Source: Octopus bimaculoides (taxonomy: Eukaryota). Taken from it: 64,000 nt of DNA. The translations under genes and the position numbers were made by a program. The notes under the pieces are model-generated. The model was given only the letters and a program-made list of their open reading frames with translations. It was not told where the DNA came from and did not search any database. The stretch's first letter is position 1, and each line of letters begins with the position of its first letter. The DNA lies in assembly GCF_001194135.2 (NCBI RefSeq), contig NC_069001.1, forward strand, positions 30,436,891 through 30,500,890. Reading direction: 5' to 3'. Shown here piece by piece: positions 27,726 through 28,877 of the stretch.

Positions 27726-28193
27726 AGAATAAAAATTATATTCGAAATTAGACTGGTATCTTTAATGCAGATAAATATATGACTAGATTGCAATTACACT
27801 CATGTCTCCAGAGAAAATTAAACGTACGCACAAGTATTAAGTACATTTATACATGTACACGCATACGTGCCCTGCTGTCTTTCACCTCTCTCTCATTGTA
27901 TATATATGTATATGTATATATCATTATTAATCATAGTGCAGCAAAATAAATTTTAGAAATTTAATTTACCACCAGTGGTCCAGCGAGAATTAAAAAAATA
28001 GTCAATAGACTACATATATATTATTCATTTAAAATATAGAGATGCCTATAATAGGACATCTACCCGCTAGCATTTGTTTTACATTTACTACCGATTAGTT
28101 AATACGCACATGCGTGGTTAATTTTTGGGAAAGTAAGCTTGTAAACTCGAGTCAGGTTCTTTCCTTGGCTCGTGTTTACACGCTAATCCGGAT

Positions 28194-28264
28194 CTCTGCT
28201 GACGAAAGCCCCGGAGTTAGATATAATTTTATCTAGCTAAATAGCTTGAAACCATGGTACAGAG
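28194..28264 (+). ncRNA. Type I hammerhead ribozyme, intact core, copy 1
   Basis: Stem I CTCTG(28194-98)/CAGAG(28260-64); CUGACGA 28199-28205; helix II AAGC/GCTT enclosing an extra hairpin AGTTAGATA/TATCTAGCT; GAAA 28248-51; helix III AC-CATG-GU (palindrome ACCATGGT); predicted cleavage after GUA at 28259. Confidence 0.9.
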
Positions 28265-28654
28265 TGTAGACTGGTAAAAATGTTTTTATTTTTCATTCTC
28301 TTTCGAAATTATCCCTATTTTTGTGGTATAGAGTTTTTTGCTACTCTTTCTAGTGGGTAGATGTCCTATTATAGGCATCTCTATATTTTAAATGAATAAT
28401 ATATATGTAGTTTATTGACTAATTTTTTATTCTCGCTGGACATCTGGTGGTAAATTAAATTTCTAAAATTTATTTTGCTGCCCTATGATTAATAATGATA
28501 TATTTTTGGCTAATTTCTGAAAGAAAATCGGCATTTGTTTTACATTTACTGCCGATTAGTTAATACGCACATGCGTGGTTAATTTTTGGGAAAGTAAGCT
28601 TGTAAATTCGAGTCAGGTTCTTTCCTTGACTTGTGTTTACACGCTAATCCGGAT

Positions 28655-28725
28655 CTCTGCTGACGAAAGCCCCGGGGTTAGATATAATTTTATCTAGCTA
28701 AATAGCTTGAAACCATGGTACAGAG
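28655..28725 (+). ncRNA. Type I hammerhead ribozyme, intact core, copy 2
   Basis: Same architecture: CTCTG 28655-59, CUGACGA 28660-66, GAAA 28709-12, GUA ending at 28720, CAGAG 28721-25. The single change in the helix II insert converts an A-U pair to G-U. Confidence 0.9.
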
Positions 28726-28838
28726 TGTATACTGGTAAAAATGTTTTCATTTTTCATTCTCTTTCGAAATTATCCCTATTTTTGTGGTATAGAGTTTTTT
28801 GCTACTCTTTCTAGCGGGTAGATGTCCTATTATAGGCA

Positions 28839-28877
<39 letters not shown>

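What the first reader, a model, noticed from the sequence alone, without database searches (positions are those of the whole stretch)
28071..28843. Tandem intact type I hammerhead ribozymes 461 nt apart: candidate cephalopod retrozyme / circRNA-producing element
Seen in sequence: two repeats 97% identical (8 substitutions in 312 bp), each with a complete hammerhead. The parts are stem I CUCUG/CAGAG, core CUGACGA, helix II AAGC/GCUU, GAAA, and a minimal helix III formed by the palindrome ACCAUGGU with a GUA site (cuts after 28259 and 28720). No substitution hits the core or proximal helices, and the one in the helix II insert keeps pairing (A-U to G-U). There is no ORF. Established knowledge: Penelope-like elements and metazoan non-LTR retrozymes carry type I HHRs with short palindromic helix III that work as dimers in tandem copies, and retrozymes yield circular RNAs. 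Inference: a plus-strand transcript would self-cleave twice and release a 461-nt monomer (28260-28720) that could circularise and be mobilised by a PLE reverse transcriptase. The roughly 34-nt hairpin-bearing insert in helix II is unusual. I am not aware of this family being described in cephalopods, but I could not search.
Basis: partly seen in the sequence, partly recalled or inferred. Interest (0 to 1): 0.9.

Follow-up and report, generated by a model that had tools for sequence, protein, structure and literature searches.

The report
Hammerhead-ribozyme retroelement insertion (retrozyme-like)
A 930-base insertion carries 1.7 tandem copies plus one inverted piece of a 461-base non-coding unit with a complete self-cleaving hammerhead motif. 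It looks like a new member of the known animal "retrozyme" / Penelope-associated family, but its activity is untested.

Summary
Positions 28070-28382 and 28531-28843 are direct repeats with 8 substitutions in 313 bp and a period of 461. Each carries a complete type I hammerhead (28194-28264 and 28655-28725, cutting after 28259 and 28720).

A descriptor scan finds only these two strong motifs. A strict motif is expected about 0.0014 times per window by chance. Rfam Hammerhead_1 aligns end to end but below threshold (17.8 bits, cut-off 34), mainly because of a 28-nt hairpin inserted in loop 2.

- An inverted partial copy (27916-28070, the reverse complement of 28350-28503).
- A roughly 30-bp duplicated microsatellite target on both sides.
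- Short microhomologies at both outer junctions.

Together these mark one retrotransposition event of the Penelope-like kind, with cDNA primed from both nicked target strands on a multimeric or circular 461-nt RNA. No ORF or RT/endonuclease remnant was found.

The argument that the core is conserved carries no weight (P about 0.4). The 10.1-11.1 pair is A-U rather than the conserved G-C.

Cleavage, circular RNA, copy number and the cephalopod origin could not be tested. I found no relatives.

Verdict: a new member of a known kind, of moderate interest.

The parts
27886..27915 (.). Left copy of the putative ~30-bp target-site duplication, CTCTCTCTCATTGTATATATATGTATATGT, a (CT)n(TA)n(TG) microsatellite target.
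   Evidence: This 30-mer matches at >=24/30 at only one other place in the 64-kb window (9576) and at 28848-28854, directly at the right edge of the insertion. Junctions are shown.
27916..28070 (-). Inverted, 5'-truncated partial copy of the unit. It is the reverse complement of 28350-28503. Its outer end begins with ATATAT, which is shared with the (TA)n target.
   Evidence: 155-nt alignment, 95.5% complementary. The inner 33 nt are 100% complementary to 28811-28843 (I6).
28070..28530 (+). Full 461-nt unit (copy 1).
   Evidence: Direct repeat with period 461.
28194..28264 (+). Hammerhead 1. Helix I is CUCUG/CAGAG and the core is CUGACGA. Helix II is AAGC/GCUU, extended by a 5x5 internal loop and a 9-bp hairpin (28215-28238). 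Then come GAAA, the palindromic helix III ACCAUGGU and the GUA site. The cut is after 28259.
   Evidence: Descriptor scan. Rfam RF00163 full-length alignment at 17.8 bits. Folds.
28260..28720 (+). Predicted 461-nt monomer released by double cleavage. It is the candidate circular RNA.
   Evidence: Inference from the two cut sites. The linear fold is -119.8 kcal/mol with z=-4.3. The circular fold is -115.4 kcal/mol with 64% of bases paired and z=-5.2, and GC is 32%.
28504..28530 (+). 27-nt segment present between the two direct copies but absent from the inverted copy. It lies between the internal priming point and the next unit.
   Evidence: The inverted-arm homology stops at 28503. The link to priming is inference.
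28531..28843 (+). Partial second unit (313 nt). It ends in ...GGCATCTCT, which overlaps the (CT)n of the target.
28655..28725 (+). Hammerhead 2, identical to hammerhead 1 except G28676 (a G-U pair in the insert hairpin). The cut is after 28720.
28844..28877 (.). Right copy of the putative target-site duplication, (CT)n(TA)n(TG)n, lengthened by microsatellite slippage.
   Evidence: (D3).

Best explanation
Positions 27916-28843 are one old insertion of a short, non-coding, hammerhead-bearing retroelement. It is a metazoan non-LTR 'retrozyme'-type unit of 461 nt, put in place by a Penelope-like (PLE) reverse transcriptase/endonuclease.

Shown by sequence:
- 1.68 direct copies of the unit, each with a complete type I hammerhead.
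- An upstream inverted partial copy.
- A duplicated microsatellite target of about 30 bp.
- Microhomology at both outer junctions: TCTCT on the right and ATATAT on the left.

Inferred insertion mechanism:
1. The target (CT)n(TA)n(TG)n was nicked on both strands about 30 bp apart.
2. The bottom-strand 3' end annealed to ...CAUCUCU (unit position about 312). It was extended for 774 nt over a template with 461-nt periodicity, meaning a multimeric transcript or a circular monomer copied by rolling circle.
3. The top-strand 3' end (...TATAT) annealed to AUAUAU (unit position about 433) and was extended for 155 nt. This gave the inverted arm.
4. The two cDNAs were joined at 28070/28071.

Inferred life cycle: a plus-strand transcript spanning two units pairs the two ACCAUGGU palindromes into an 8-bp helix III, forming a double hammerhead. 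[quoted passage not shown] A host RtcB-type ligase could circularise this RNA.

This particular locus may no longer be active.
For: - Repeat geometry.
- Hammerheads occur only here in the window, and the strict motif is expected 0.0014 times per window, or about 1e-5 per 461-nt unit.
- Rfam Hammerhead_1 gives a full-length sub-threshold alignment that keeps the loop-2 AAUA. A chance descriptor hit at 34912-34959 gets no hammerhead alignment under the same lax search.
- TSD-like flanks: the left 30-mer recurs at the right edge and at only one other place in 64 kb.
- Junction microhomologies.
- The double-hammerhead structure is -48.6 kcal/mol against a dimer MFE of -52.8, and that MFE already contains the intermolecular ACCAUGGU helix.
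- No ORF above 40 aa in the unit. No RT or GIY-YIG domain in the ten longest non-repetitive stop-free segments of 18-40 kb. No tRNA-like part.
- Literature on PLE insertions: partial tandems with an inverted 5'-truncated copy upstream, and a bias for microsatellite targets (PMC8557442).
- Literature on mechanism: a purified PLE protein cleaves and extends both DNA strands and starts reverse transcription inside the RNA (PMC11167929).
- Literature on retrozymes: type I hammerheads in short AT-rich tandem repeats are non-LTR retrozymes, proposed to be mobilised by PLEs (PMC7229834; preprint 10.64898/2026.07.22.740005).
- 774 nt of direct sequence already contains 1.68 repeats, so the template itself had a 461-nt period. 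A 5'-truncated copy of a 3-kb PLE transcript could not give this.
Against: - This is a single locus. There are no other copies in the window and no relatives in any collection I could search, so there is no covariation or family evidence.
- The Rfam score is below the gathering cut-off.
- The 10.1-11.1 pair is A-U, whereas G-C is highly conserved (PMC4209133).
- The 28-nt hairpin splits loop 2, which in canonical type I motifs contacts loop 1.
- The two proposed cDNA start points are 121 nt apart, not the 30-40 nt of the PLE 'tail' signature.
- The TSD lies in microsatellite sequence, which is common in this window.
- PLE hammerheads cleave poorly in vitro and were not needed for insertion in vitro (PMC4209133, PMC11167929).
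Confidence: 0.65

Rival explanations
1. The locus is an ordinary remnant of an autonomous Penelope-like element. The 461-nt unit would be just a pseudo-LTR (fused 3' and 5' ends) of an internally deleted PLE, not a separate non-autonomous family.
For: Hammerheads sit in PLE pseudo-LTRs (PMC4209133). In Xenopus, retrozymes are sequence relatives of pLTRs (preprint 10.64898/2026.07.22.740005). The insertion architecture here is PLE-like.
Against: Only 148 nt separate the direct repeats, and there is no ORF above 40 aa. No RT or GIY-YIG domain was seen nearby (a limited test). The template already had a 461-nt period, so whatever was copied was a short non-coding unit.
Confidence: 0.15
2. The locus arose by DNA-level rearrangement, such as replication slippage or template switching in a microsatellite-rich region. 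This would have produced a tandem duplication and an inverted duplication of ordinary sequence, and the hammerhead-like motif would be a chance match.
For: There are no other copies anywhere I could search. The Rfam score is sub-threshold. At genome scale, tens of strict chance motifs are expected. The A-U pair at 10.1-11.1 is atypical.
Against: The chance of a strict motif inside a given 461-nt unit is about 1e-5. The motif has the palindromic helix III and the loop-2 AAUA typical of animal type I hammerheads. The TSD-like flanks and junction microhomology fit retrotransposition.
Confidence: 0.08
3. The locus is a foldback or MITE-like DNA transposon (27916-28503) with 155-bp terminal inverted repeats around a 279-bp core, followed by a partial local duplication.
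For: Long inverted arms, 95.5% complementary, flank the core.
Against: No duplication flanks 27916 and 28503. The flank similarity is between 27886-27915 and 28844-28877, which encloses the extra direct copy as well. A second event would be needed for the 313-bp direct repeat. The hammerhead would be left unexplained.
Confidence: 0.05

Closest known systems
Metazoan non-LTR retrozymes (Cervera & de la Pena 2020, PMC7229834): short tandem repeats with type I hammerheads in corals, mussels and salamanders, expressed as circular RNAs
   Same: A type I hammerhead in each unit, head-to-tail copies, no ORF, low GC (32%), a TSD longer than 4 bp, and a well-folded monomer. As in amphibian units, the weak palindromic helix III implies action as a dimer.
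   Different: - The unit is 461 nt; reported repeats are 150-450 bp and reported circles about 170-400 nt.
- Only 1.68 copies are present, and TRF does not call the repeat, even with the 2026 preprint's settings.
- Loop 2 carries a 28-nt hairpin.
- The 10.1-11.1 pair is A-U.
- Expression and circles are untested.
- An inverted partial copy is attached.
Minimal hammerheads in the pseudo-LTRs of Penelope-like elements (Cervera & de la Pena 2014, PMC4209133), and the PLE insertion architecture (Craig et al. 2021, PMC8557442; Frangieh et al. 2024, PMC11167929)
   Same: A short helix I (5 bp), an enlarged helix II, and a palindromic 15.2-16.2 / loop 3. The insertion has a partial tandem, an upstream inverted 5'-truncated copy and a microsatellite/AT-rich target. 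The structure implies cDNA synthesis from both target strands.
   Different: [quoted passage not shown] The 10.1-11.1 pair is A-U instead of G-C. The two cDNA start points are 121 nt apart rather than 30-40 nt.
Hammerhead satellites and SINE-like repeats: newt satellite 2, Schistosoma Sm-alpha, cave-cricket pDo500 (Rfam Hammerhead_1 RF00163)
   Same: The same core. The loop-2 AAUA aligns to the Rfam consensus. The minimal helix III requires a double hammerhead in multimeric transcripts.
   Different: This is not a long satellite array. The score is below the Rfam cut-off. No tRNA-like part is present.
Twin priming of LINE-1 (inversion with 5' truncation)
   Same: There is an inverted upstream segment and a direct downstream segment. 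The junctions show microhomology and a small piece (27 nt) is lost between the two.
   Different: The template here is periodic (more than one unit long). No poly(A) is present. The enzyme family is presumably PLE, not LINE.

Membership tests
Hammerhead ribozyme, type I (Rfam RF00163) | Conserved core CUGANGA ... GAAA, with U16.1 and H17 at the cut site | tested here: met
   CUGACGA, GAAA and G-U-A in both copies.
Hammerhead ribozyme, type I (Rfam RF00163) | Three helices around the core, with helix I open (type I topology) | tested here: met
   Helix I has 5 bp and is open. Helix II has 4 bp plus an internal loop and a 9-bp hairpin. Helix III is 2-3 bp as a monomer or 8 bp as a dimer.
Hammerhead ribozyme, type I (Rfam RF00163) | Score at or above the Rfam gathering cut-off (34 bits) | tested here: not met
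   17.8 bits, E=0.039 in a 101-nt search, with a full-length alignment. Nothing was found at the gathering threshold.
Hammerhead ribozyme, type I (Rfam RF00163) | G10.1-C11.1 pair at the base of helix II | tested here: not met
   The pair is A10.1-U11.1 (28206 with 28247) in both copies. PMC4209133 describes the G-C pair as highly conserved.
Hammerhead ribozyme, type I (Rfam RF00163) | Self-cleavage at the predicted site | not testable with these tools
   This needs in vitro transcription of 28150-28780.
Metazoan non-LTR retrozyme | At least two consecutive tandem units, each with a complete type I hammerhead | tested here: met
   Two hammerheads lie 461 nt apart in 1.68 units. TRF does not report the repeat, even with the preprint's parameters, because there are fewer than two full copies.
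Metazoan non-LTR retrozyme | Non-coding unit of a few hundred bp (150-450) with low GC | tested here: inconclusive
   There is no ORF above 40 aa and GC is 32%. The unit is 461 nt, just above the reported range (PMC7229834).
Metazoan non-LTR retrozyme | Multi-copy family dispersed in the genome | not testable with these tools
   No eukaryotic genome collection is on hand. There is no second copy in the window and no relatives by the indirect routes.
Metazoan non-LTR retrozyme | Expressed as linear and circular monomer RNA | not testable with these tools
   No transcript data are available.
Autonomous Penelope-like element | ORF with reverse transcriptase and GIY-YIG endonuclease between the pseudo-LTRs | tested here: not met
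   Only 148 nt lie between the direct repeats. No long ORF is present. Pfam found only a weak DUF4817 match 4 kb away.
PLE-type insertion (what it works like) | Partial tandem, an inverted 5'-truncated copy upstream, and a microsatellite/AT-rich target with a variable TSD | tested here: met
   compared with PMC8557442 and PMC11167929.
PLE-type insertion (what it works like) | 30-40-bp 'tail' between two alternative RT start sites | tested here: inconclusive
   A 27-nt segment (28504-28530) is missing from the inverted copy. However, the two outer ends map 121 nt apart in the unit.

The most novel reading that the evidence does not exclude
This locus may be a retrozyme caught with the full insertion scar of a Penelope-like enzyme: dual-strand priming, a rolling-circle-length cDNA and a roughly 30-bp TSD. 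If so, it would be direct structural evidence, in a mollusc-like genome, that PLE machinery copies circular or multimeric retrozyme RNA. Its hammerhead would also be an undescribed variant, with a hairpin inserted into loop 2 and an A-U pair at 10.1-11.1. That variant could cleave only as a dimer or only with protein help.
Probability: 0.3. Interest if true: 0.55.

Novelty: new member of a known kind. Interest (0 to 1): 0.4.

Why it matters
Which enzyme moves animal retrozymes is still argued mostly from co-occurrence and sequence relatedness to PLE ends. A short non-coding hammerhead unit that carries the PLE-specific insertion scar gives a concrete, testable example. That scar is the inverted truncated copy, the more-than-unit tandem, and microhomology at both nicked strands of a microsatellite target.

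The enlarged helix II and the A-U pair at 10.1-11.1 would also test how much the hammerhead periphery and the 10.1-11.1 pair can vary in nature.

If the family is absent elsewhere in the genome, or the RNA does not cleave, this is just one decayed repeat.

Tried and rejected
- **Rfam at default settings.** No hammerhead was found. Only a 101-nt lax search showed the sub-threshold full-length match.
- **Relatives by exact product.** An exact look-up of the two 40-aa spurious ORFs found nothing.
- **Relatives by protein search.** A search with nine concatenated stop-to-stop peptides of the unit gave 584 word candidates, none scoring E<=10.
- **Relatives by DNA pattern.** A pattern scan of viral contigs gave 0 matches, and one of metagenome contigs gave 0.
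- **My error in the second metagenome scan.** The gap range was 10-40, but the window's own spacing is 41.
- **Organism.** The DUF4817-like ORF at 23481-23855 gave only 63-74% identical hits from unnamed ENA and Logan contigs. 'Cephalopod' therefore stays unverified.
- **Six-frame Pfam scan through stop codons.** I replaced it with the ten longest informative stop-free segments.
- **Selection on the hammerhead from the two copies.** Rejected as underpowered.
- **Weak descriptor hit at 34912-34959 (-).** Rejected as chance.
- **tRNA-derived SINE idea.** No tRNA-like region was found.
- **Literature.** Within the searchable library I found no paper on retrozymes in cephalopods. The giant squid genome paper reports 235 Rfam hammerhead_1 hits.

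Full report

- Positions 28070-28382 and 28531-28843 are direct repeats 461 nt apart. They are 313 bp long and 97.4% identical.
- The eight substitutions are at 28090, 28146, 28168, 28171, 28215, 28269, 28287 and 28354. Seven are transitions.
- Each copy reads CUCUG-CUGACGA-AAGC-[34 nt]-GCUU-GAAA-ACCAUGGU-A|CAGAG. The cut sites are after 28259 and 28720, so the released monomer would be 28260-28720 (461 nt).
- The 34-nt insert forms a 9-bp hairpin (28215-28223 with 28230-28238) above a 5x5 internal loop. The single substitution inside a hammerhead (28215, A to G) turns A-U into G-U.
- The longest ORF in the unit is 40 aa.

**Is the hammerhead more than chance?** My descriptor required CUGANGA, GAAA, U16.1, H17, helix I of at least 4 bp, helix II of at least 3 bp and helix III of at least 3 bp.

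- It finds the two copies and one weak AT-rich hit at 34912-34959 on the minus strand.
- In 42 Mb of first-order Markov sequence with the window's composition, the relaxed motif occurred 12 times. The strict motif (I >=5, II >=4, III >=3) occurred once, and the version with an 8-nt palindromic helix III never occurred.
- That is about 0.0014 strict motifs per window, or about 1e-5 per 461-nt unit. It is also tens per 2.5-Gb genome, so the motif alone would not be enough at genome scale.
- Rfam gives nothing at gathering thresholds or at E<=10 in a 1.2-kb search.
- With lax filters on 101 nt, Hammerhead_1 (RF00163) aligns over its whole length (1-45/45) to 28193-28265. The score is 17.8 bits against a cut-off of 34, with E=0.039.
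- That alignment places a 28-nt insertion inside loop 2 and keeps the consensus AAUA on the 3' side of the loop.
- The weak hit at 34912-34959 gets no hammerhead alignment under the same lax search. It serves as a small negative control.

- Positions 27916-28070 are the reverse complement of 28350-28503 (155 nt, 95.5%). A partial inverted copy of the unit therefore sits directly upstream of the first direct copy.
- The 30 nt left of it (27886-27915, CTCTCTCTCATTGTATATATATGTATATGT) recur at 25/30 directly right of the last copy (28848-28854 onward). They recur at >=24/30 at only one other place in the 64-kb window.
- This looks like a target-site duplication of about 30 bp in a (CT)n(TA)n(TG)n microsatellite. 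It delimits 27916-28843 as a single insertion.
- Both outer junctions show microhomology. On the right...GGCATCTCT runs into (CT)n, whereas the unit continues with ATATTTT. On the left, (TA)n runs into ATATATCATT..., whereas the unit has AAAAATATATCATT.
- The inversion junction (28070/28071) overlaps by one base.
- A 27-nt stretch (28504-28530) is present between the direct copies but not in the inverted copy.

**Mechanism (inference).** The geometry is what is described for Penelope-like elements.

- PLE insertions form partial tandems with an inverted 5'-truncated copy upstream, and they prefer microsatellite targets (PMC8557442).
- A purified PLE protein cleaves and extends both strands of the target and starts reverse transcription inside the RNA (PMC11167929).

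Read this way, the events were:

1. The bottom-strand end, which is the complement of (CT)n, annealed to ...CAUCUCU at unit position about 312. It was extended for 774 nt.
2. The top-strand end (...TATAT) annealed to AUAUAU at unit position about 433. It was extended for 155 nt.
3. The 27 nt between that priming point and the start of the next unit were lost when the two cDNAs were joined.

Because 774 nt of direct sequence already holds 1.68 repeats, the template itself had a 461-nt period. It was therefore either a multimeric transcript or a circular monomer copied more than once round. That is the proposal made for retrozymes (PMC7229834) and earlier for PLEs (PMC4209133). A 5'-truncated copy of a 3-kb autonomous PLE could not give this pattern.

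**Ribozyme plausibility.**

- As a monomer, helix III can form only 2 bp. The monomeric hammerhead fold is -15.8 kcal/mol against an MFE of -17.9.
- Two copies pair their ACCAUGGU palindromes in the cofold MFE (-52.8 kcal/mol, against -36.4 for the two monomers).
- The full double-hammerhead structure costs only about 4 kcal/mol more, at -48.6.
- The 461-nt monomer folds better than shuffles. The linear fold has z=-4.3. The circular fold has z=-5.2, with 64% of bases paired and 32% GC.

Against activity:

- The 10.1-11.1 pair is A-U, while G-C is described as highly conserved (PMC4209133).
- Loop 2 is split by the hairpin.
- PLE hammerheads cleave weakly in vitro or need protein (PMC4209133, PMC11167929).

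**Conservation and age.** With 8 substitutions in 313 bp, 0.95 are expected in the 37 core and proximal nucleotides and 1.8 in the 71-nt motif. Observing 0 and 1 gives P=0.37 and P=0.43. This is no evidence of selection. The divergence of the direct copies (2.6%) and of the inverted arms (4.5%) does not differ significantly (P=0.27). That fits one event followed by neutral decay, so this locus is old and may be dead.

**Surroundings.**

- No gap touches the locus. The nearest N runs are 26739-26748 and 29949-30564.
- Within 18-40 kb, the ten longest informative stop-free segments gave only a weak DUF4817 match at 23481-23855. There was no RT or GIY-YIG domain.
- There is no tRNA-like part.
- The neighbourhood is full of dispersed repeats. 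The unit itself has no other copy in the window.

**Relatives and organism.** None of the routes open to me found a relative. My second metagenome scan used a gap range that excluded the window's own spacing and is void. The source organism could not be identified, so the cephalopod attribution is unverified.

**Comparison and novelty.** The locus works like, and most likely is, a metazoan non-LTR retrozyme or PLE-dependent non-autonomous element.

- Such elements are known from cnidarians to amphibians, including molluscs (PMC7229834).
- Their PLE origin is argued in a 2026 preprint (10.64898/2026.07.22.740005).
- 235 Rfam hammerhead_1 hits are already reported in the giant squid genome (PMC6962438).
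- I found no paper on cephalopod retrozymes in the searchable library.
- The unit is slightly longer than reported, and the hammerhead is atypical. TRF-based pipelines would miss the 1.68-copy repeat.

I rate it a new member of a known kind, with variant hammerhead details, and of moderate interest. Its main added value is the clean PLE-type insertion scar on an ORF-less unit.

Noticed in passing
window 34912-34959 (-): A weak hammerhead-like descriptor hit: CUGACGA core, helix I 4 bp, helix II 3 bp, helix III 5 bp, AT-rich. It gets no Rfam hammerhead alignment even with lax filters, so it is most likely chance.
   Followed up: yes
window 23481-23855 (+): A 125-aa stop-free segment with a weak DUF4817 helix-turn-helix match (E=0.02). 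It has 47 homologues (best 63-74% identity, E down to 6e-24) in unnamed ENA, Logan and JGI contigs and in insect proteins. It is probably a decayed transposase fragment.
   Followed up: partly
window 27587-27725 (+) and 32566-32701 (-); also 26304-26861 with copies at 56194-56522, 42219-42454, 52342-52424 and 27273-27323; and 25507-25661 with 31372-31526 and 37819-37881: Several families of dispersed repeats, 76-95% identical, surround the hammerhead locus. The nearest copy ends about 190 bp upstream of the insertion. They were not classified.
   Followed up: partly
window 29574-29948 and 30568-30770: A TCT-rich minisatellite (periods of 27-30 and 51-57 bp, 84-92% matches) lies on both sides of the assembly gap 29949-30564. 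It produces long low-complexity ORFs on both strands (500 aa and 409 aa), which are artefacts.
   Followed up: no
whole window: There are 14 runs of N (4651 bases), most of them embedded in (TA)n, (TG)n or (TC)n microsatellites. Overall GC is 31%. This is a short-read-type scaffold in which tandem arrays could be collapsed, although no gap touches 27886-28877.
   Followed up: partly
window 28100-28125 and 28561-28586: A conserved stem-loop, GUUAAUACGCACAUGCGUGGUUAAU, lies about 95 nt upstream of each hammerhead and is identical in both copies. It forms in every predicted fold of the monomer. Its role is unknown.
   Followed up: no
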